Assembly (NCBI GenBank): GCA_033442325.1
Contig: JAWQFM010000016.1
Coordinates: 691,221-755,220 of the forward strand
Length of the DNA stretch: 64,000 bases
From: Salpingoeca rosetta
Taxonomy: Eukaryota > Protista > Choanoflagellata
Reading direction: 5' to 3'
Under the pieces are notes generated by a model, which saw only the letters and a program-made list of their open reading frames with translations, was not told where the DNA came from and searched no databases. Both the position numbers and the translations under genes were made by a program. Shown in pieces: positions 52,082-62,719 of this stretch (position 1 is its first letter; each line of letters opens with the position of its first letter).

Positions 52082-52724
52082 CTGCAGAAGCCACAGCAAA
52101 TACTTTACATGTGCCTTTAGCCCATTCAAGCCCTGTGACCGCTGGTTTCATTGTTAGTGTCAACTGTTCGCGCTGTGTGTCGTTGGTTACCCTTCTCCAT
52201 TACCACACGAAGACTTTTTGCGTGTAGCGTTACTTGATCATCGATTCACCATTATGTGCTTGGGTTCATGTGGCTGTCGGCGTGAGGTGCACTGAACATG
52301 TTTTATGTCTTGCGTGTTTGTTCGTGCAAGCCCCACTCACTTCACAGTTTGTTCCCTTCAAGTGTAACGTGGACTTTTGATGTCAGTGGGCTGGTTCATG
52401 CGAGCACCCACGCGCTGTACTGCCTCGAGTGACGCTGATGCATTCCGCGTAACCCACGCAGTTGCTGGGGTTGAAGGGGCGTTGATGTTGGTAACTCAAG
52501 AGGAAGAAGGCTGCAAGCCGAGGAAAGCACGCAAGCAGCGTAACTGCCAAAATATACCTCTGCCGCACATAACATGACAGGAAACACATCAACCAAGGCA
52601 AGCAATTCCTATTCTGGGAGGAGGTGAAGCTTGTCACGACGAGCAAGGATGATGAGACAATTGCCACGGACGGATACCGCCCTTGCCACGGTGAACCACA
52701 GAGCGGGATGATGGGTATCATACA

Positions 52725-52899
52725 TCAAAGCTCCTCTCGTTGCGCAGGCTCAGATTCAATCACTTCAATCTCAAACCGCACGGGCGAGTGCGGCGGGATA
52801 GTTTTCGGCGTGTCAACCTTGCTGTACCCATACTCGCTGTCACACGTAATGTACGCTCGTTCACCTGTGTTGTGTGTTGTGTGTGTGTATGTGTGTGTA

Positions 52900-52933
<34 letters not shown>

Positions 52934-55900
52934 TGTGTGTGTGTGTGAGTGTGTGTGTGTGTTCGATCTAATACAAAGGAAATGTTTGCACACACAATGC
53001 ACGCGCAATCGCTCACAGCACAAATCAGCAAGAGCGCTTTGCATACCGAGCGACATGCTGGAGACGCCAATGTCCCAGCAGCGGATCGCCATGCCCGTGC
53101 CGAGTTTGAACATGTAGGGCACACCGTCGTCCCTGTTTGATTCACACGAAACAGCGGTGCATGACGGTAGCACGAGGGCATGGGACAGCGAGACGTTGGC
53201 AATGAGTATGATGCAAAGAAGGGGCACACAGGCAGGGGCGCACGCATGTTTATGCATACATACATACATACATACATACATACATACATACATACATACA
53301 TACATACATACATACATACACACATACATACATACATACATACATACATACATACATACATACATACATACATACATACATACATACGTACATACATGCA
53401 TACATACACACATACATACATACATACATACATACATACATACATACATACATACATACATACATACATACATACATACATACATACATACATACATACA
53501 TACATACATACATACATACATACATACATACATGCATACATACATACATACATACATACATGCATACATACATACATACATACATACGTACATACATACA
53601 TACATACATACATACGTACATACACTCGCACACACAACACAGCATGTATGGGAACACAACCCACATGGTGTTTTCGAAGACCGTGCCATTGGGCAGCGAT
53701 CCAATCATGTGGACGGTGATTGTGGAGCCTGGGGTGAGGAATTTGCCGGAACCAGGGTGGATGACGTGCTTGACAACCCCGCCATCCTGCGTCAAGGCCT
53801 CCTGTTGTTGCGCCCATCCACCAGAACAAAAGCATGCGAAATGCATGAGCGTGGCGACGAGAACAAACAACGCACGCACGTCTGATCATGATGCAAGGAA
53901 ATCTGGTGCGTTGCCCGCGGAACAAACAGAACCGTGATGCCATGTACGGACGCATGCGTGATGGAGATGCCAATTGCTCACGTGGCTCAAGTGGGACAGC
54001 TGGTCCACAAACTCCTGGAATACGCCCCGCTTTCTCGCTTTCTCTTCTCCCGTCTGCTGGCACAGAGCACGCAGGCGCAAGTGAGCGCCACAAAACTTCA
54101 AGAGCCATAATCGCCACACGCATACTTGGACACGAGCGTCCAATGAACTTGGTGTTGTACGCTTGCACACCCGTGGGTTTGTGTTTGGCTGACAACACGC
54201 ACCTGCGCTTTCAACTCCTTGACGTTTGCCTGGATTTGAGCCCAAGTCTTCTTCACCGCGGGCACATTCGCCTTGAGCCACTTGAGGATGCGAGAGCGCT
54301 TGATGGAGCCCGTGTACGCCTAAACATGAGGGAGAAGGAGGAAGGAAATGGTGAGGAAGAGGGGGGACGCAGCAAAAAGAACAGTTGGGAGGGGGCGGAT
54401 GTGAAGCGAAACAAAGTGTGGACATCTCGCGAGGACGCCATCGCTGTCGAGCCATACCGGACTGACAGAGCCCGCACGTGGAGGAAGAAGGCGACAACGC
54501 ACAACACGGCACGATAGTTCTCCCTCCCCGTCTCCCCTGCCTCCTTCCCTTCCCGCGCACCTTTGGTCGGGCAGTGTGGTCCATGGTGTGGGTCCAGAGA
54601 AACCCCTTGAGGTTGGCAGCGTTGAAGCGCTGGCCGTGACCCGGCGGGGGCGCATTCCCGCCAATGTTGTACACACCGATGATCGCGCCACTCGCCGACA
54701 GCACGTGTGCAGTCTGAAGTTGTGCGAGCGAGTGTGTGAGTGAGCGAGTGTGAGCGTGAGTGAGTGAGTGAGCGAGAGAGTGTGCGCGTGCGAGTGTGCG
54801 TGCGAGTGTGCGTTAGCGCGTGTGTGCGAGTGTGCGTGAGAGAGTGAGTGAGTGTGCGTGAGAGAGAGTGTGTGAGTGAGTGAGTGAGTGTGAGCGAGTG
54901 AGTGTGAGTGAGTGTGTGTGTGTGTGTGAGTGAGTGAGTGTGGGGTCATGCGTGCACGTCCTGCACTCAACGCCCCTCCACCAAAGTCAACAGCTCACCT
55001 CTTGCAGTATAGCACGCGCCCTCTGCCAAGACGGGTGAAGTTCGTGGCAGAAGAACAGCAGCACGTCTCGATCTCCATCCACAAACGGTTCAAATGTACG
55101 CAGAGACACCTGAACTCAACAGAATGTGCGTGTGTTGACGTGTGAACGTGTGTACGTGTGTATGCATGTGTATGTGTGCATACGTGTTTGTGTGTGTGTG
55201 TGTGTGTGGTGACAAGCTGGGGGCGTATTGGGTCGGTACAACAACAGCATGTGTACTTCAGCGCAGGAAGGTGTTCTGACCCACCCCACACAGCCCAAAC
55301 CTTTGCCAAGTGTCCTGGTTCAAACGACGTGTCGCCTGCCTCTGTCTTGGGCGCTGCCGTCAGTTCGCCCGCAAGAAACCGCGACACGAAGCCGGCAACC
55401 TGCGAAGGAGTGGTTGGCGATAGCGGGCCAGGATGGTGATGGCGGGTGGTGGTTGTGGCGTCGACGCAGACGCAGCTAGAAGCACACAAGCACGCAAGTG
55501 CACAAGCGTGCACGAGTTCATACGTCATGAGAGAACACACCTCTGCTTGTGTCAAACTCTTCGTGATAAGGGGATAGCGAGCGCTTTGTGGGAAGGCGTT
55601 CTCTGCAATGCCAAACGCGGGCAGGGAACTTTCATGGATGCCTGCAGAGGCACAAAACAAACAAAACACACACACGTGTACACACACATACAGACACACA
55701 CACACACGCGCGCGCGGAGATGTACATACGCATGCACATGTACATACACACACAGATGTGCATGGAATATCCGGAATGAGTGAGTTGCGCACTGGTTCAC
55801 CATCAAGAATGAAAGCATTTGGTGAGAAAGGTGCATGAGCATGAAACAAACCATAGTCGTCGCGAATTTCTGGAAACTCTGATGTGACATATGTACAGGT

Positions 55901-56615
55901 GATTGCATCACGGTAGCTTGCAGCCACGCTTTGCAAGAGAGCGCGTGCCTGCTGCTTTGCTTGTGCGTCCTATTGCAACATAAAACGCACGTAAAGAGGA
56001 AAAGGCGATGAGCCAGCGTGTGTGCGTGCATGCATGCATGCACGTGTGTGTGTGTGTGCGTGTTTGTGTGTCGACGTGAGTTGTGAACCAAACCCGGAGA
56101 ACAGGTCGAACAAGCCTGTCTGCATGTGCTACTTTGAATCTGTCACCCCAGCACTATAACAACTGATAATCGCCACCACCCTCACCACAACAACGACCAC
56201 AGCAACGGCCACAGCAACGAACACCATGCCTTGAGTCATCATCACACGTCATCATAGTCTTCACCACCAGCACCAGCACCAGCACCAGCGTTGGTTCTAC
56301 CTGCACAAAGAGGTGGGCAACAGGAAGACCAGAGCGCTCGAGTGTTTCGCGCGACGTCCACGTGAACTTGACGACAGGCGGCAGCCTGATGACACGCAGT
56401 GCAAGGCAGAGAGCAGAGAGGGGAGGTCAACAGGGCGGGGAGAGTGTAACATCGGACATCAACACACAGAGATTCGTGGTGGTGGTGGTGGTGGAAAGCT
56501 GTTGTTGGCTGTTTCTGTTGATGTGAAAGCGAGGATGGGGAAGCAGACAACTAAGTCGGACAGGTCAGTTTGGGGGTGAAGGGCAACTAGACGGAACCCC
56601 AAGCTCAGACATGGC

Positions 56616-56705
<90 letters not shown>

Positions 56706-56921
56706 GCAGGTGGCACGTTCTGACGTTCTGATGAGGGCCCAGTGCGTGAGGTTGGTGGAGAGAATGGCGTCACCGGAGAGCGACTCATAGTCGCCATCTT
56801 CGCTGCGAAACACAACAACCGCGGGCGGCTGGACGGGCGCAGAGGAGTCAGCACGTGGCGGGGTCGCGCAGTCGTGCGTGTGTGAGTGTGGATGCAAGAT
56901 TCCACACAAACTGGGGATGTG

Positions 56922-56957
<36 letters not shown>

Positions 56958-57543
56958 CCGCACCTGAATGTCATGGAAAACGCTGGTGGCAAGACCCAGG
57001 ATGAAGAGTTCGCGTGTGGCGTTGGCTGCACCCCATTGCGTGAAGGCGCTCTTGTGTGCAGTATCAGCACTGCCAAACACGCCCACAACTGCAACAGTCT
57101 TTCGGCGCTCTGCATGTTGGGGCAGCGTGAGTGATGGCGGGAAAGTGAGGTTATGTGGTACAAAGACAGCAAGTGTACACGGTTATGCGCTTCTGCACAC
57201 GCAGTCACAATCAGACAGGCAGCAGGGAGAATGGATTCGCAGGTAGACAGACACGGACGAACACGCAGGCAGACGGACGAACACACGCACACATGCACGC
57301 ACACACGCACCTTGCCACGGCGCGGGAACGGACGATTTGTGCTCGATGAGCGAATCAAAGACCTGCGCGGGGGATGAGAAGTCCTTGAAAGGAGCAGATG
57401 TGTACAGCGACACGCGCTCGTACAGCACATCCTCCTCATCATCAAACGAGATGGCCCGCGGCTGTGGCGAAGCCAGCGGTTGCACATGTGTGTGTGTGTG
57501 TGTGTTGTTGTTGTTGTTTAAGTTGTTGTTGTTGTTGTTTAAG

Positions 57544-57607
<64 letters not shown>

Positions 57608-57612
57608 CGTCG

Positions 57613-57665
<53 letters not shown>

Positions 57666-58707
57666 CGTCGATTGGTGGAAAGGAGGGTGAGCATGTTCAG
57701 CGCAACGGTGTTCAAAGGATGTGCAAAGTAGATTCGCACACATCACATCACACACATCACATCACATCACATCACATCACATCACATCACATCACATCAC
57801 ATCACACACACACACATATCAAATCACACACACACACACATAACATTCGCGCACATCACACACGCGCACAAAACATGCCAAAAACTGTACCTGCGACGTG
57901 TCGCGGCTGTAGATGTGCAGCACACATTGGCCGTCACACGTCTTGTTGAGGCTGTGGCGCAATGCCCGGTTGTCCACAAGGTCAACATGGGCGAACACCA
58001 CGTCATCCCGCTGCTCATGGAAGCGCCGAGCAACCCTAACAAATGCCCTTCTCGCTGGATTGCACGCACGACACCAACCAAGATCGGCGTCCACCACAAC
58101 AAAGCTCGGGTTCGCTTGCAGCACCGAGGTGGACAGCGGCGTGACGCGGGTGTCCGCATACAGTACACCTGCGTCTTCCCCGCTCTCTGTCTCGTCAATG
58201 AGGCTGTCATCAAAGCTCTCCCAGTCCACAACGATGCGCCTGCAACATACAGTCACGGGGCACGAGCGCAGTTGTCCACGAGTGAAAACGCACGTATACG
58301 AGTGTGAGCACGTGCATGTAAGTGTACAAGCATGCATGCGAGCGCAAAAGCAGCTATACGAAGGTACGAGCGCGCTTTCTCGAGTTGGAACATGTACAAA
58401 GTGTTGCACACACCCACAATGCACGCCAGTGAAACTTGAGCATGCAAAAAAAAAGGGGGGGGGGCTCCATACACCCATTGCTGACCTTACCCTGAGAATG
58501 CCGTTGGGTTCTCTTCGAGGCGGTCAAAGGCGTGAGGTATCTCTTTGGTCAGGCTGCAGGACAATTTCGTGGCTGAGACCGGGTGGCACTCGGACTTTTC
58601 AGCCACAATGTCCTCGCGCAGCTCCAGCGTTATTCCAGCTTCCTGCACACATCGTGTGTAGCGTCGATGAACAGCGTACGGAAAGAAGGCGGAGATACGC
58701 AGTGTGG

Positions 58708-58739
<32 letters not shown>

Positions 58740-59175
58740 TGTACATGCACACACACATGCACACGTATACATACACAAACGCACATGCACAAACACACAC
58801 AAGTATGCACACGAGCATGCACATGCACATGCACACACGCATGCACACGTATACATACACAAACGCACGCACACACACATGCACATACACACGCACACAC
58901 ACGCACACACACATGCACATGCACAAACAAACACAAACAACAACACAAACAACAACACAAACACAAGGACGCACCTCAAGATCGGAACACGTGAGGAGCA
59001 AGGTTGCACGCTCAAAGACAGCCGTGGGAGCGGTAGGGCAGCTGTGAGTGATGTGAAGCTTCAAGGCCTGAGCCGTCTGCGACCACTTGATTAGCGGAGG
59101 GTCTGCTTTCGCTGTGGCTGCACCAGCTGTGACAGCCAACACAGCCACCACAACCACAACCACCAGCACTGCCAT
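52725..59175 (-). CDS. ER-lumen fusion protein: signal peptide + CS/p23 domain + PDI-like a-b-b'-a' thioredoxin domains + FKBP PPIase + REEL
   Basis: 17 exons join in one frame with GT-AG sites: 59175-58975, 58642-58491, 58239-57891, 57461-57311, 57109-56964, then ~56829-56725, 56385-56301, 55969-55852, 55641-55541, 55399-55301, 55109-54999, 54713-54561, 54319-54203, 54052-53981, 53801-53665, 53132-53047, 52864-52725. CS: [24 protein letters not shown]. Trx: LGWCRAC. FKBP: [58 protein letters not shown]. Ends QREEL*. Confidence 0.88.
53255..53623. repeat. (CATA)n microsatellite in an FKBP-domain intron
   Basis: ~370 bp, directly visible. Confidence 0.95.
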
Positions 59176-59316
59176 CAGGTCAGCGGTGTCGCAGGACCAC
59201 TACCAAATCCTTTTAACAGGACAATCCACTAAAATTAGGCACAGAGGTGAGTTGTGAAGATTTGTGGGCATTTTCCAACAAGATTCAACACCTTCTTGAA
59301 AACGTGCACACCGAAG
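59176..59316. promoter_or_regulatory. Putative bidirectional promoter CS-PDI-FKBP / mL50
   Basis: Only 141 bp between divergent ATGs, AT-rich core. Confidence 0.65.
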
Positions 59317-60680
59317 ATGGCAGCGAGGCGGCTGGCGACGGTGGTGGCACAAGGGTTGGTGTCGCGTGCAAGCCATGCAAGCAGAACAGGGTCAATGGCG
59401 GCGGCAACAGCAGCAACAGGCATGCCTGCGCTTGCTCCTACTACTACCCAAATCTTGGCGCAACACAGCATGAGCATTTGGTCCAAGATCTTGAAACCAA
59501 GCCAGGAGGAAGAGAAGAAGGAGAAGACACAGGATGCGGTGGCTGAGCCCCAAGACGTGCAACCTGCCGGAGAAGCCTTCAAGTGCGTGAAGTGCCGTGG
59601 TCTGTTGGTGACTGCAGGTGTATGATGGCGCTCGTGTGTTGGTGTTGCCATGCTGTTGACAACAGGCTTGTGCATGCCTTGGTTCCTCATCCGTGAACAC
59701 TTTCCTGCCCCACACGCGCAAGTATGCAAGTGTGTGCACGCTTGCCTTAGCTCACGCGCTCTTGATGTGCTCTGTTGAACAGGGGTGTGGAAACAAAGGC
59801 GGTGCCCGAGTCTGTGGATGTGTTTGTAAAGGAGCGACTAGCATCCCTGAGGTCAAGTGCTGGCTCTTCAATCAGCGACAAGACAAGGCTGTCATCGCTG
59901 CGCGAAAAGTACTTGGTACGTGTTGTGGGGTGCACGGCAGTCATGACATGTGCAAGTGACGTGGACTGCTCATCTTTTGCTGTTGCATTTCTGGGCCACC
60001 TGAGTCATTACGTGTGTGCGTTTGCTGACACCTTTACTTCCTGCATGCATTGTCTGCCTGTGCTGTGTGCAACGCCCCCACAGCTGCTTGCAGAGTGCGA
60101 GGAAGCATTCAACCAGCATGTGGACATGAACATGGTGTCCAAGCTTGACACAGTTCAGGTGAGTTGAGTTGACCCCTGAGGGGTCTTTGCTTAGCGTGCT
60201 GTTTATGCGACAAGCGCAAGGGCGACTGGGAGAGAGAGAGTGTGTGTGTGTGTGCGTGCGTGTGTGTGTGCGTGTGTGGCTGCATGTTGCTTGCTCGCTT
60301 GATCAATCGCTCCAGCATCCCTCAGTAGCTCGGCTGTGGCATCAGCCGCTAACGCTTTGGTCTCGCTTCTCTCTCTCACTCTCTCACACACACACACACT
60401 CTCTCTCTCACACACACACACTCACGTCACACACACACACACACACTCTCTCTCTCACGCGCACACACACACTCACGTCTCTCTCCACAATCGTGATTCT
60501 GGCTCCATTCACCTGATCATGGTCGCCGCACCCCCTTTCTTTCCTTTGCAGCACGTTGTCAAGTACTTTGAGAAGAAGCTGAACGCGGAGCCGCGGGAGT
60601 TTGGATGGCGCCTCCGCAGAGCCGAGCCGCTGCCACAAAACGTCGTCGTCTCAGACCCAGACATTGCCCACACACAGTGA
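59317..60680 (+). CDS. MRPL50: Mitochondrial large ribosomal subunit protein mL50-like
   Basis: Exons 59317-59582, 59783-59915, 60084-60158 and 60552-60680 join in phase. N-terminus is Arg/Ala-rich and acid-free (MAARRLATVVAQGLVSRAS). C-domain LSSLREKYL|LLAECEEAFNQHV..LDTVQ|HVVKYF..LPQNV matches the remembered mL50 pattern. Confidence 0.7.
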
Positions 60681-61078: not shown

Positions 61079-62719
61079 TTACAGCATGGACATGGGCTGC
61101 TGCTGTTGTTGCTGCTGTTGTTGCTGCTGTTGCTGTTGTGCCGTGGCTGTTGCGACGTGGTGGCGCATGAGCTGGTGTGCAATGGCCCCGCTCGGTGGGG
61201 TGCGCAGGCCGTCTTGGCCGCCGCTGTTCTCCAGCATCGCCTGCACCTCCGCCAGCGTGAACCATCGCGCGTCCTCAAGCTCGTTCGGGTCGACGGTGAT
61301 GTCCGTGGTGGTCGCCTGCGCCACAAACCCGAGCATGAGCGAGTACGGGAACGGCCACGGCTGCGACGAGTGGTACGTGCACGCGCCCACGCGCACGCCG
61401 GCCTCCTCCTGCACCTCCCGCCGCACCGCCTCCTCCGCAGACTCGCCGTGCTCCATAAATCCGGCCAGCGCAGACCACATGCCAGGCGGGTAGCGCGACT
61501 GGCGGGCCAGCAGCGCGCTGTTGGTGGCGGGGTCGACAACAACCATGATGACGACGGGGTCCGTGCGCGGGAACCACCGGCCCGTGCACTCTGGTGCGGC
61601 CTCGCACGCAAGCTCACTGCCGCCTTTTCGCGCCACAACGCGCTTGCCACACAGCCCGCAGAACCGGTGTCGCTGTAGAAACTCAAGCAACGCCCTGTCG
61701 TTGTTTCGTGGCAAAGTAATGGGGGGAGGGAGGGACAGAGTGGGGGCAGGTGAGTGATGTGGTCTAGTTTGAAGTTGCATTCGTAAGTGGGCAGGCAACA
61801 GATGCGGTACGCTGCTACGTCTGTAACACACACGTACGCACACTGCATACTGCACACACAAGTACATACATACGCACACTGCACACACATACACACACAC
61901 GCACAGAGTCGTACTTTGCATGGGCAGTGATGGCTGCCTCTGTGCGTGTTGCCGTGCTCAGAGCATAGGTGCGAACATTCAGCGGAGCTGCCGCCTCGCC
62001 TGGCGACGATGAAGAAACCAGGTCAAAATGATCACAGAGCGTGAGAGGGACGACAGCACATGCCAATCTGTAATTCCAATCAGGCTGTTCTGTATCGCTA
62101 GCAGCAGTAAAAACAACAGTTGCCACGCTCACCGAACGAGTGCTCCGCCAAAGTTTGCGGTGTAGTCGGAAATGCCCACAAAAAGTCACCCACCTCCACG
62201 TTGTCTGCATCAGCACAAGATGCACGACCGAGAGAGTGGGTGGGTGGATGTGTGTGTGTGAGTGTGTGTGAGTGTGTGTGTGTGTGTGTGTGTGTATTTG
62301 CATGAGACTGGCAGAGCGGCTGCATGTGCGCTGATGTGTGGAAGCGCAGACAGTTTAGCGTTGTGGCTGAAGCAAGGTACAAGTCGCTTGTTCTCCTCCT
62401 CACCAAGTTCAGTGGCATCCGTGACCTTGCCAAGAAGCACACAGCCCTTGTGACTGAAGTGCTTGTCGTCGCTGCTGCTGGCGGAGTTGTCCAGCAGGGC
62501 GGCAATGGCTGGGTGTTGGCGTGACAACCAGACAAGCTTTGGCACTGCTGCCGAGCTTGTGGAATTCACCACCACTTCCAGGTTCACAAAGGGAAGGAAG
62601 CGTGCACGCGCCGAGGTCAACGCCTGCTCCAAGAACGCTGCATCTCCACGCTCGTTGTTGCACCTGTCCACAGCCAGCGATGCGCCACTGAACACGTTGT
62701 GCACCGCACGGTCCGTCAT
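61079..62719 (-). CDS. NUDT12: NADH pyrophosphatase / NAD-cap decapping Nudix hydrolase (NudC, NUDT12/13 family)
   Basis: Exons ~62719-62405, 62204-62134, 61998-61915, 61694-61079. Zinc ribbon RFCGLCG..C....C, WFPRTDPVVI, Nudix box AGFMEHGESAEEAVRREVQEEAG, NudC signature SQPWPFPYSLM, IAHQL. C-terminal SML. Confidence 0.92.

What the first reader, a model, noticed from the sequence alone, without database searches (positions are those of the whole stretch)
52725..59175. Single-chain ER folding machine: p23/CS + PDI + FKBP with signal peptide and REEL
Seen: 17 exons splice in one continuous frame (every phase checked) from a hydrophobic signal peptide through a CS/p23-like domain, four thioredoxin-fold domains and an FKBP domain to C-terminal REEL. 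Known: p23/CS proteins are cytosolic Hsp90 co-chaperones; ER Hsp90 (GRP94) has no recognised p23-type partner; animal PDIs and ER PPIases are separate proteins that associate non-covalently. Inference: a covalent oxidoreductase + prolyl isomerase + chaperone-docking module, possibly a lumenal GRP94 co-chaperone. I do not recall this architecture being characterised.
Basis: partly seen in the sequence, partly recalled or inferred. Interest (0 to 1): 0.88.

Follow-up and report, generated by a model that had tools for sequence, protein, structure and literature searches.

The report
ER p23-like + PDI + FKBP fusion
This is a real 17-exon gene of the choanoflagellate Salpingoeca rosetta (PTSG_06263) for one secreted-pathway protein that joins a p23-like chaperone domain, a disulfide isomerase and a prolyl isomerase; no paper found here describes this combination, and it may be a first p23-type partner for the ER's Hsp90.

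Summary
Seventeen GT-AG exons on the minus strand (59175-52725) splice into one frame of 774 codons. The product equals the public model PTSG_06263 / XP_004993152.1 (773 aa) except for one Gln at a NAGNAG acceptor.

The architecture is confirmed:
- a signal peptide;
- a p23-like CS beta-sandwich (family profile against PDB p23 and Sgt1, E 2.5e-9; the model's best fold matches are human p23, TM about 0.7);
- a PDI module a-b-b'-a', in which only the a domain has a CxxC (WCRAC);
- a long helix, an FKBP domain (75.6 bits) and a C-terminal REEL.

Full-length orthologues with the same order and xxEL tails come from de novo transcripts of S. infusionum, an unnamed EukProt species and the diplonemid Namystynia. 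Separate transcripts are therefore unlikely.

New points are ten conserved cysteines in domain-wise pairs, an invariant C-x3-C in place of the Trx cis-Pro loop, and retention of the p23 aromatic motif that binds Hsp90 (W124-x-x-F127). S. rosetta also has a GRP94 ending in HEEL.

GRP94 docking remains untested; the complex prediction gave no answer. No paper describing this architecture was found. Verdict: a new variant of a known kind, of moderate to high interest.

The parts
52725..59175 (-). Whole gene: 17 coding exons, ATG to TGA. It is S. rosetta PTSG_06263, 773/774 aa.
   Evidence: splice model, all GT-AG, one frame; identity to P0001 / XP_004993152.1; public genomic record GL832968.1.
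59107..59175 (-). Signal peptide, residues 1-23: a hydrophobic core of about 14 residues followed by a small-residue A-x-A-type end.
   Evidence: It is the only Kyte-Doolittle window above 1.6 in the protein, and the same holds in all four full-length orthologues. It forms a low-confidence helix 2-16 in the model.
58215..59106 (-). p23-like CS domain, residues 24-126. It is encoded by exon 1, exon 2 and the first 25 bases of exon 3. It includes four conserved Cys (46, 63, 86, 96) and the W124-x-x-F127-D-D motif.
   Evidence: The family profile hits only CS proteins in the PDB (plant p23-like 2kmw and Sgt1 at 2.5e-9; p23 1ejf at 1.2e-5). Pfam CS is hit by 4 of the 6 sequences (from five proteins) in the N-domain alignment. 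The AF2 model has pLDDT 74.8, and its best Foldseek matches are human p23 with TM 0.69-0.72. Cysteines.
58173..58214 (-). Acidic, disordered linker, residues 127-140.
   Evidence: pLDDT is below 50 at residues 132-139; the acidic composition is seen directly in the sequence.
57396..58172 (-). Thioredoxin domain a, residues 141-256 (exons 3-4). The active site W-C174-R-A-C177 lies at 58073-58062. The invariant C219-x3-C223 at 57938-57924 stands where the cis-Pro loop should be.
   Evidence: The family a-domain profile hits PDIA4 at 9.4e-22 and PDI at about 2e-18. In that alignment the second Cys of the C-x3-C motif falls on the cis-Pro of the G-Y-P-T loop. Invariant columns.
55367..57395 (-). 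Non-catalytic thioredoxin-fold domains b (residues 257-368) and b' (369-480), exons 4-10.
   Evidence: Pfam Thioredoxin_6, 54.9 bits, residues 323-474. The region is collinear with PDI b-b' in a PDB sequence match. The model shows beta-alpha-beta-alpha-beta-beta-alpha patterns.
54248..55366 (-). a'-like thioredoxin fold without a CxxC, residues 481-614 (exons 10-13).
   Evidence: The model has Trx-type secondary structure at 500-608. The start of the domain aligns to the a' domain of PDI just before its active site. No orthologue has a CxxC here.
53991..54247 (-). Long connecting helix, residues 615-650 (exons 13-14). Exon 14 has a tandem acceptor at 54056/54053.
   Evidence: Helix 616-648 in the model; the NAGNAG difference is shown.
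52746..53990 (-). FKBP-type PPIase domain, residues 651-767 (end of exon 14 and exons 15-17), with conserved Cys717 and Cys735.
   Evidence: Pfam FKBP_C 75.6 bits on the spliced protein. The three exons hit profile positions 5-28, 31-56 and 59-94 in order. PDB matches reach 1e-24 (FKBP52 FK1). Cysteines.
52728..52739 (-). C-terminal R-E-E-L ER retrieval tail.
   Evidence: Seen directly. Orthologues end in HNEL, REEL and SDEL. The S. rosetta GRP94 ends in HEEL.

Best explanation
The locus encodes one soluble, ER-resident folding enzyme that combines three activities on a single chain.

Shown:
- A signal peptide sends it into the ER, and the REEL tail is of the type that retrieves proteins there.
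- The chain then has a p23-type CS beta-sandwich and a classical PDI module a-b-b'-a'. Only the a domain has a redox site (WCRAC); b-b' form the usual non-catalytic core and a' is redox-dead.
- A rigid helix and an FKBP prolyl isomerase follow.
- Ten cysteines are conserved in pairs within domains.

Inferred:
- The protein catalyses disulfide exchange through C174/C177 and prolyl isomerisation through the FKBP pocket on the same bound client.
- The conserved cysteine pairs are disulfides that adapt each module to the oxidising lumen.
- The CS domain acts as the chain's binding module. It either holds non-native clients as p23, NudC and small HSPs do, or docks the enzyme on another chaperone.

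CS directly precedes the CxxC domain in every family member, including those that lack FKBP. The CS-Trx pair is therefore the functional core and FKBP is an add-on.
For: - Gene model and identity to PTSG_06263.
- Single transcript in relatives: complete ORFs with the same order come from de novo transcript assemblies of S. infusionum, an unnamed EukProt species and Namystynia.
- Domain borders do not coincide with exon borders. Exon 3 encodes the last CS strand with the invariant D123-W124, and also the CxxC and C-x3-C of the Trx a domain. The FKBP domain begins in exon 14.
- CS.
- PDI module.
- FKBP.
- ER residence: one N-terminal hydrophobic segment only, xxEL tails in 4 of 4 full-length members, and HEEL on the same organism's GRP94.
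- Conserved cysteine pairs.
- CS-Trx core without FKBP: P0005 (a tandem CS-PDI x2) and the fragments P0006, P0009 and P0011.
Against:
- P0001 alone does not reach the Pfam CS or Thioredoxin cut-offs. Both assignments rest on family profiles and on models of moderate confidence built from six-sequence alignments (pLDDT 75-77).
- The a domain lacks the near-universal cis-Pro, and the S. rosetta FKBP has Met for Tyr26 and Glu for Asp37. Either catalytic activity could be weak or altered.
- Localisation, enzymatic activities and disulfides are all inferred, not measured.
Confidence: 0.72

Rival explanations
1. One reading: the CS domain is a lumenal p23-type co-chaperone module. It would dock on the closed, ATP-bound GRP94 dimer through W124/F127 and the acidic linker, bringing disulfide and prolyl isomerase activity to GRP94 clients. 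The logic parallels ERdj5, which joins a BiP-docking J domain to thioredoxin domains.
For: - The best fold matches are p23 in Hsp90 complexes rather than other CS proteins.
- HMMER aligns the family through the p23-specific segment after the core, placing the invariant D-W on p23 D102-F103.
- In yeast p23 the F121-x-x-W124 pair (human F103/W106) is required for Hsp90 binding and ATPase inhibition, with nearby acidic residues proposed to contact Lys387/390 (PMC7864943). S. rosetta has W124-E-S-F127-D-D followed by an acidic linker; S. infusionum has W-D-N-Y and P0006 has W-E-R-W.
- S. rosetta encodes a GRP94 with a signal-peptide exon and a HEEL tail.
- A review lists only BiP and the client-specific CNPY3 as GRP94 helpers, with no p23-type partner (PMC12610889).
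Against: - There is no binding evidence. The complex prediction scored 0.00 and counts neither way.
- The second aromatic is shifted in P0004 and P0012 and absent in both P0005 repeats and in P0009.
- Many CS domains (NudC, Shq1, CYB5R4, USP19) have roles not tied to Hsp90 (established knowledge of these families).
Confidence: 0.25
2. The gene model is an artefactual fusion of two or three neighbouring genes (a CS gene, a PDI gene and an FKBP gene), or the parts are normally made from separate transcripts.
For: The introns are long and repeat-rich, and no S. rosetta read or cDNA was laid here.
Against: - All 16 introns are GT-AG and keep one frame.
- Exon 3 carries parts of both the CS and Trx a domains, and exon 14 carries the helix and the FKBP start.
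- Three independent transcript-derived ORFs from other species have the same full architecture.
- There is no internal signal peptide or stop.
Confidence: 0.03
3. It is a largely non-catalytic scaffold or pseudo-enzyme. The Trx a domain, without a cis-Pro and with four clustered cysteines, may bind a metal or Fe-S cluster or hold a fixed disulfide. The S. rosetta FKBP may be only a proline-binding module.
For: - The cis-Pro is replaced by Cys, and the C-x2-C ... C-x3-C quartet is invariant in 10 of 10 sequences.
- The a' domain is already redox-dead.
- There are Tyr26-to-Met and Asp37-to-Glu changes in the S. rosetta FKBP.
Against: - The W-C-x-x-C motif and its context score strongly against catalytic PDI a domains.
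- Orthologue FKBP domains keep the canonical Tyr and Asp.
- The remaining pocket residues (Phe36, Trp59, Tyr82, Phe99 equivalents) are kept in S. rosetta.
Confidence: 0.12

Closest known systems
Classical protein disulfide isomerase (PDIA1/P4HB, yeast Pdi1p; a-b-b'-a')
   Same: It has four thioredoxin folds in the same order and collinear by sequence, from the a domain through b-b' into the start of a'. It also has a signal peptide and a C-terminal xxEL retrieval tail.
   Different: Only the a domain has a CxxC (WCRAC rather than WCGHC), and a' has none. The cis-Pro loop of the a domain is replaced by an invariant C-x3-C. A CS domain is added at the N terminus and a helix plus FKBP at the C terminus.
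p23 / Sba1 / PTGES3 (cytosolic Hsp90 co-chaperone, CS domain)
   Same: It has the same beta-sandwich fold (TM about 0.7 to human p23). The profile match runs through the post-core segment that carries the Hsp90-binding aromatic pair, and an acidic stretch follows the domain.
   Different: It lies behind a signal peptide and in front of a PDI, has four conserved cysteines that p23 lacks, and has no long p23 tail with the client-binding helix. Hsp90/GRP94 binding is untested.
ERdj5 (DNAJC10): J domain plus thioredoxin domains, ER lumen
   Same: The design logic is the same: a co-chaperone-type docking domain fused to PDI-like thioredoxin domains, with a signal peptide and a KDEL-type tail (established knowledge of ERdj5).
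   Different: The docking domain here is CS, not J. There is one redox site instead of four, and an FKBP is added. This is an analogy only, not homology outside the Trx folds.
ER-resident FKBPs (FKBP13/FKBP2, FKBP22/FKBP14, FKBP23, FKBP65) and the Hsp90-bound immunophilins FKBP51/52
   Same: It has an FKBP_C domain with most pocket residues, and ER targeting with an xxEL tail like the ER FKBPs. Its best solved matches are FK1 domains of wheat FKBP73 and human FKBP52/51.
   Different: It has no EF hands and no TPR domain, and it is covalently joined to a PDI. The S. rosetta copy has Met and Glu at the Tyr26 and Asp37 positions.

Membership tests
CS domain / p23 family (Pfam PF04969, HSP20-like fold) | Seven- to eight-stranded beta-sandwich fold | tested here: met
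   The AF2 N-domain model shows 7 core strands plus a short eighth. The top Foldseek PDB matches are p23, Sgt1-CS, NudC and Sba1, all with probability 1.00 and TM up to 0.72.
CS domain / p23 family (Pfam PF04969, HSP20-like fold) | Sequence match to the family model above threshold | tested here: inconclusive
   P0001 alone gives no PF04969 hit. However, 4 of the 6 aligned N-domain sequences (from five proteins) hit it (best 5.4e-8), P0005 scores 35.9 bits against a 21.3 cut-off, and the family profile hits 15 PDB chains that are all CS proteins (best 2.5e-9).
CS domain / p23 family (Pfam PF04969, HSP20-like fold) | p23-subfamily aromatic pair after the core (yeast F121-x-x-W124; human F103/W106) | tested here: met
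   S. rosetta has W124-E-S-F127. The invariant D-W aligns with p23 D-F103, and the role of the motif is taken from PMC7864943. The second aromatic is not conserved across the whole family.
CS domain / p23 family (Pfam PF04969, HSP20-like fold) | Binds Hsp90 in its closed, ATP-bound state | not testable with these tools
   Complex prediction gave no verdict. A binding assay is needed.
Protein disulfide isomerase family | Thioredoxin-fold catalytic domain with a CxxC | tested here: met
   W-C174-R-A-C177 is invariant as W-C-x-x-C in 10 of 10 sequences. The profile hits PDIA4 at 9.4e-22.
Protein disulfide isomerase family | Non-catalytic b and b' domains | tested here: met
   Thioredoxin_6 scores 54.9 bits, and the region is collinear with PDI b-b'.
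Protein disulfide isomerase family | Second catalytic a' domain with a CxxC (classical PDI only) | tested here: not met
   The fold is present, but no CxxC is found in any orthologue. This is a PDI-family member, not a classical PDI.
Protein disulfide isomerase family | cis-Pro loop facing the active site | tested here: not met
   In the alignment to PDIA4 the family's C-x3-C occupies the G-Y-P-T positions, with the second Cys on the Pro.
Protein disulfide isomerase family | Signal peptide and C-terminal ER retrieval motif | tested here: met
   There is a single N-terminal hydrophobic segment. The tails REEL, HNEL, REEL and SDEL fit the [KRHQSA]-[DENQ]-E-L pattern (the pattern is from PROSITE PS00014, quoted from memory).
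FKBP-type PPIase (Pfam PF00254) | FKBP_C domain above threshold | tested here: met
   75.6 bits against a 21.1 cut-off, residues 675-763, profile positions 5-94 of 94.
FKBP-type PPIase (Pfam PF00254) | Conserved pocket residues (FKBP12 Tyr26, Phe36, Asp37, Phe46, Val55, Ile56, Trp59, Tyr82, Phe99) | tested here: inconclusive
   In S. rosetta, Phe36, Ile56, Trp59, Tyr82 and Phe99 are kept. Tyr26 is Met, Asp37 is Glu, Phe46 is Tyr and Val55 is Ala (alignment). Orthologues keep Tyr and Asp.
FKBP-type PPIase (Pfam PF00254) | PPIase activity | not testable with these tools
   An enzyme assay is required.

The most novel reading that the evidence does not exclude
The CS domain may be the first p23-type co-chaperone module of the ER Hsp90. 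It would clamp closed GRP94 through the retained W124/F127 aromatic pair and acidic linker, and present GRP94 clients to a tethered disulfide isomerase and prolyl isomerase. The family would then be a lumenal counterpart of the cytosolic Hsp90-p23-FKBP51/52 maturation complex, made as a single chain. It is kept in choanoflagellates and diplonemids, and the exon-3 search found no close relative elsewhere.
Probability: 0.22. Interest if true: 0.85.

Novelty: new variant of a known kind. Interest (0 to 1): 0.6.

Why it matters
CS/p23 domains are known as cytosolic and nuclear modules. A conserved one behind a signal peptide, stiffened by conserved cysteines and fused to a PDI, would be an unexpected place to find this fold.

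GRP94 is usually described as working without the co-chaperone set of cytosolic Hsp90, with only BiP and client-specific helpers such as CNPY3 (PMC12610889). This protein offers a concrete, testable candidate for a p23-type partner, in an organism that can be transfected and that sits next to animals on the tree.

Even if GRP94 is not involved, three things remain of interest:
- a natural single-chain oxidoreductase plus PPIase plus holdase;
- a Trx active site in which the near-universal cis-Pro is replaced by an invariant C-x3-C;
- a patchy distribution (choanoflagellates, a diplonemid, unplaced protists) that bears on how ER folding machinery evolved.

Tried and rejected
- **The look-up of sequencing runs.** Several runs hold 0.28-0.37 of the gene's words, close to the exon-only expectation of 0.275. 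They are not among the listed holders of intron 2.
- **The look-up of encoding contigs.** Only the public genomic record was returned, with no transcript contig.
- **The search for homologous proteins.** Each of the three searches returned only its own query (P0001 twice, P0004 once). The word index does not reach relatives at 25-35% identity, so these blanks say nothing about distribution.
- **Complex prediction.** I tested the CS domain against two copies of the S. rosetta GRP94 N-M fragment. The score was 0.00, below the mark, and the controls were not run. This is no evidence for or against binding.
- **The protein-atlas search.** No large cluster matches this family. One ciliate cluster of 351-aa proteins with some CS annotation resembles the CS-Trx part (TM 0.49) and was not followed up.
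- **Exon-by-exon Pfam scan.** Too weak for CS or Trx; it became clear only once the spliced public protein was found.
- **A plus-strand gene overlapping the locus.** Rejected. Only low-complexity or antisense open frames are present.
- **Paralogues.** Only this gene matches the CS-domain profile in the 55-Mb genome at E <= 0.01.

Full report
**1. The observation**

Reading the minus strand of 52500-59400 and translating it in three frames gave a chain of coding segments. I joined these by hand and checked the joins by script.
- There are seventeen exons, and all sixteen introns are GT..AG. They measure 135-532 bases, with a mean of 258.
- The result is one continuous frame of 2325 bases, from the ATG at 59175 to the TGA at 52727-52725. 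An in-frame stop lies just upstream of the ATG.
- The introns are full of microsatellites, and no credible plus-strand gene overlaps the locus.

**2. Identity of the locus**

I searched 1.84 billion representative proteins with exon 3 alone (116 codons). The search returned a 773-aa protein that is 100% identical over residues 119-234. It is Salpingoeca rosetta PTSG_06263 / XP_004993152.1 / UniProt F2UCE5, named hypothetical protein or, automatically, peptidylprolyl isomerase.

My 774-aa translation differs from it only by one Gln at a tandem CAG-CAG acceptor of exon 14. The window is contig 16 of a 55.4-Mb, 68-contig assembly, and the gene also lies on the older public scaffold GL832968.1. 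The locus is therefore annotated. I found no paper that names it.

**3. One gene or several**

No transcript contig encoding the exact protein is on record.

Three other lines argue for a single mRNA:
- Three full-length relatives with the same domain order are complete ORFs from de novo transcript assemblies. They are S. infusionum (796 aa, HNEL), an unnamed EukProt species (809 aa, REEL; its ORF spans bases 15-2444 of one transcript) and the diplonemid Namystynia karyoxenos (776 aa, SDEL).
- The S. rosetta product aligns with them end to end without gaps at exon junctions.
- Domain borders do not fall on exon borders. Exon 3 encodes the last strand of the CS domain, with the invariant D123-W124, and also the CxxC and C-x3-C of the first thioredoxin domain. 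The FKBP domain begins in exon 14.

I put the chance of an artefactual fusion at about 3%.

**4. Anatomy**

*Signal peptide.* Residues 1-23 are the only strongly hydrophobic segment in the protein. The same is true of every full-length orthologue.

*CS domain (residues 24-126).*
- P0001 alone misses the Pfam CS threshold, but its aligned counterparts do not. Four of the six aligned N-domain sequences (from five proteins) hit PF04969. One member, P0005, scores 35.9 bits against a cut-off of 21.3.
- A profile of the six N-domain sequences finds fifteen PDB chains, all of them CS proteins. The best are the Arabidopsis p23-like protein 2kmw and the human Sgt1 CS domain (both 2.5e-9), followed by human p23 (1.2e-5) and NudC.
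- An AlphaFold2 model of the domain (pLDDT 74.8) is a beta-sandwich. Its best solved matches are human p23 in Hsp90 complexes and free p23 (TM 0.69-0.72), then Sgt1-CS, NudC and yeast Sba1.

*PDI module.*
- The full-length model (pLDDT 76.7) shows four beta-alpha-beta-alpha-beta-beta-alpha units at residues 141-256, 257-368, 369-480 and 481-614.
- The first unit carries W-C174-R-A-C177. As a family profile it hits PDIA4 at 9.4e-22 and PDI at about 2e-18.
- The second and third units are Pfam Thioredoxin_6 (54.9 bits).
- Residues 313-522 align collinearly with the b, b' and start-of-a' region of a solved PDI.
- The fourth unit has the fold but no CxxC in any orthologue.

*Helix, FKBP and tail.* Helix 616-648 leads to an FKBP domain. 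This scores 75.6 bits on the spliced protein, and its three exons hit consecutive parts of the Pfam model. The chain ends in REEL.

**5.

- Ten of the twelve cysteines are conserved, and they fall in even numbers within domains: four in CS, the CxxC, a further pair in Trx a, and two in FKBP. This is what one expects of modules adapted to an oxidising compartment. Cytosolic p23 has no such set.
- The further pair in Trx a, C219-x3-C223, is invariant in all ten family sequences. In the alignment to PDIA4 it occupies the G-Y-P-T loop, with the second Cys standing on the cis-proline. That loop faces the active-site cysteines in thioredoxin-fold oxidoreductases (established knowledge). The active site therefore has four clustered cysteines and no cis-Pro. 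I cannot say whether this is a structural disulfide, a relay or a metal site.
- The S. rosetta FKBP has Met and Glu where FKBP12 has Tyr26 and Asp37, while the orthologues keep Tyr and Asp.
- A 1592-aa relative, P0005, is a tandem (CS-a-b-b'-a') x2 with neither FKBP nor an xxEL tail. Shorter fragments from environmental assemblies also have CS directly in front of the CxxC domain. The conserved core of the family is thus CS plus Trx, and FKBP is an accessory.

**6. How it most likely works**

*Shown:* a secretory-pathway targeting signal, a retrieval-type tail, and CS, PDI-like and FKBP folds on one chain.

*Inferred:* the protein is a soluble ER resident that binds unfolded clients through b' and perhaps through CS. 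It exchanges disulfides through C174/C177 and isomerises prolyl bonds through the tethered FKBP. That xEEL tails mark ER residents in this organism is supported by its GRP94, which ends in HEEL.

**7. The GRP94 idea**

The genome has three Hsp90-family loci:
- a cytosolic Hsp90 ending in MEEVD;
- a GRP94 with a signal-peptide exon, one long exon and a HEEL tail;
- a third, split gene.

In yeast p23 the F121-x-x-W124 pair just after the CS core inserts into a hydrophobic pocket of the Hsp90 middle domain. F121 is required for binding and W124 for full ATPase inhibition. The human equivalents are F103 and W106 (PMC7864943).

HMMER aligns the family's invariant D-W with p23 D102-F103. S. rosetta reads W124-E-S-F127-D-D followed by an acidic linker; S. 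infusionum has W-D-N-Y and fragment P0006 has W-E-R-W. In other members the second aromatic is shifted or missing.

This evidence is suggestive only. The one complex prediction I could run used the CS domain with two copies of the GRP94 N-M fragment. It scored 0.00 and is no evidence either way. CS domains of NudC, Shq1, CYB5R4 and others also act without Hsp90. I give direct GRP94 docking about one chance in four.

**8. Comparison with what is known**

- By membership, this is a PDI-family protein, but not a classical PDI. The a' CxxC and the cis-Pro loop were both tested and not met.
- It also contains a bona fide FKBP domain and a CS domain of the p23 type.
- By design, it resembles ERdj5, where a co-chaperone docking domain is fused to thioredoxin domains. 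It also resembles the cytosolic Hsp90-p23-FKBP51/52 assembly. Both are analogies, not homology.
- A review lists BiP and the client-specific CNPY3 as GRP94's helpers and no p23-type partner (PMC12610889).
- Four full-text searches found no description of a CS-PDI or PDI-FKBP fusion.
- With exon 3 as the only query, the representative library held nine clusters of the family among 1.84 billion proteins, and no close relative from any other named lineage was returned. The family is rare rather than widespread, within the reach of that single search.

**9. Verdict**

This is a new variant of a known kind, with interest 0.6.

Noticed in passing
window 53982-54056 (exon 14 acceptor): A tandem CAG-CAG (NAGNAG) acceptor. 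Using 54056 gives 774 aa with an extra Gln630; the public model uses 54053 and gives 773 aa. Both isoforms may exist.
   Followed up: partly
window 57924-57938 (C219-x3-C223 of the Trx a domain): An invariant Cys pair replaces the cis-Pro loop of the thioredoxin fold in all ten family sequences. This leaves four clustered cysteines at the active site, which could be a structural disulfide, a relay or a metal/Fe-S site.
   Followed up: partly
window 53245-53640, 57530-57665, 56610-56705, 58700-58970, 54720-54950: The introns are packed with long microsatellites: (ATGT)n of about 390 bases in intron 15, (CAA)n in intron 3, (GT)n in introns 1 and 6, and a CACT-type repeat in intron 11. These repeats blocked read laying.
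   Followed up: no
   Followed up: no
L002 669-3311 (G000:C11, about 451468-454110) and upstream exon in L002 about 440-520: The S. rosetta GRP94 gene. A short exon encodes a signal peptide, and one very long exon runs to a C-terminal HEEL. This is unusually intron-poor for this genome. The cytosolic Hsp90 (L003 978-3278, minus strand, MEEVD) is likewise almost uninterrupted.
   Followed up: partly
P0005 (1592 aa, EukProt transcript, species not given): A tandem duplication of the whole CS-a-b-b'-a' unit, joined by a long Lys/Glu-rich linker. It has no FKBP and no xxEL tail.
   Followed up: partly
window 61079-61921, minus strand: The open frame upstream of the gene contains a clear Nudix box and a Cys-rich zinc-ribbon-like stretch, followed by a poly-Gln run. 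It is probably a NADH-pyrophosphatase-type Nudix hydrolase exon.
   Followed up: no
The protein-atlas search row 1: A ciliate cluster of 351-aa hypothetical proteins (78 members, some with Pfam CS) resembles the CS-Trx part structurally (TM 0.49). The CS-Trx pairing may therefore extend to ciliates.
   Followed up: no
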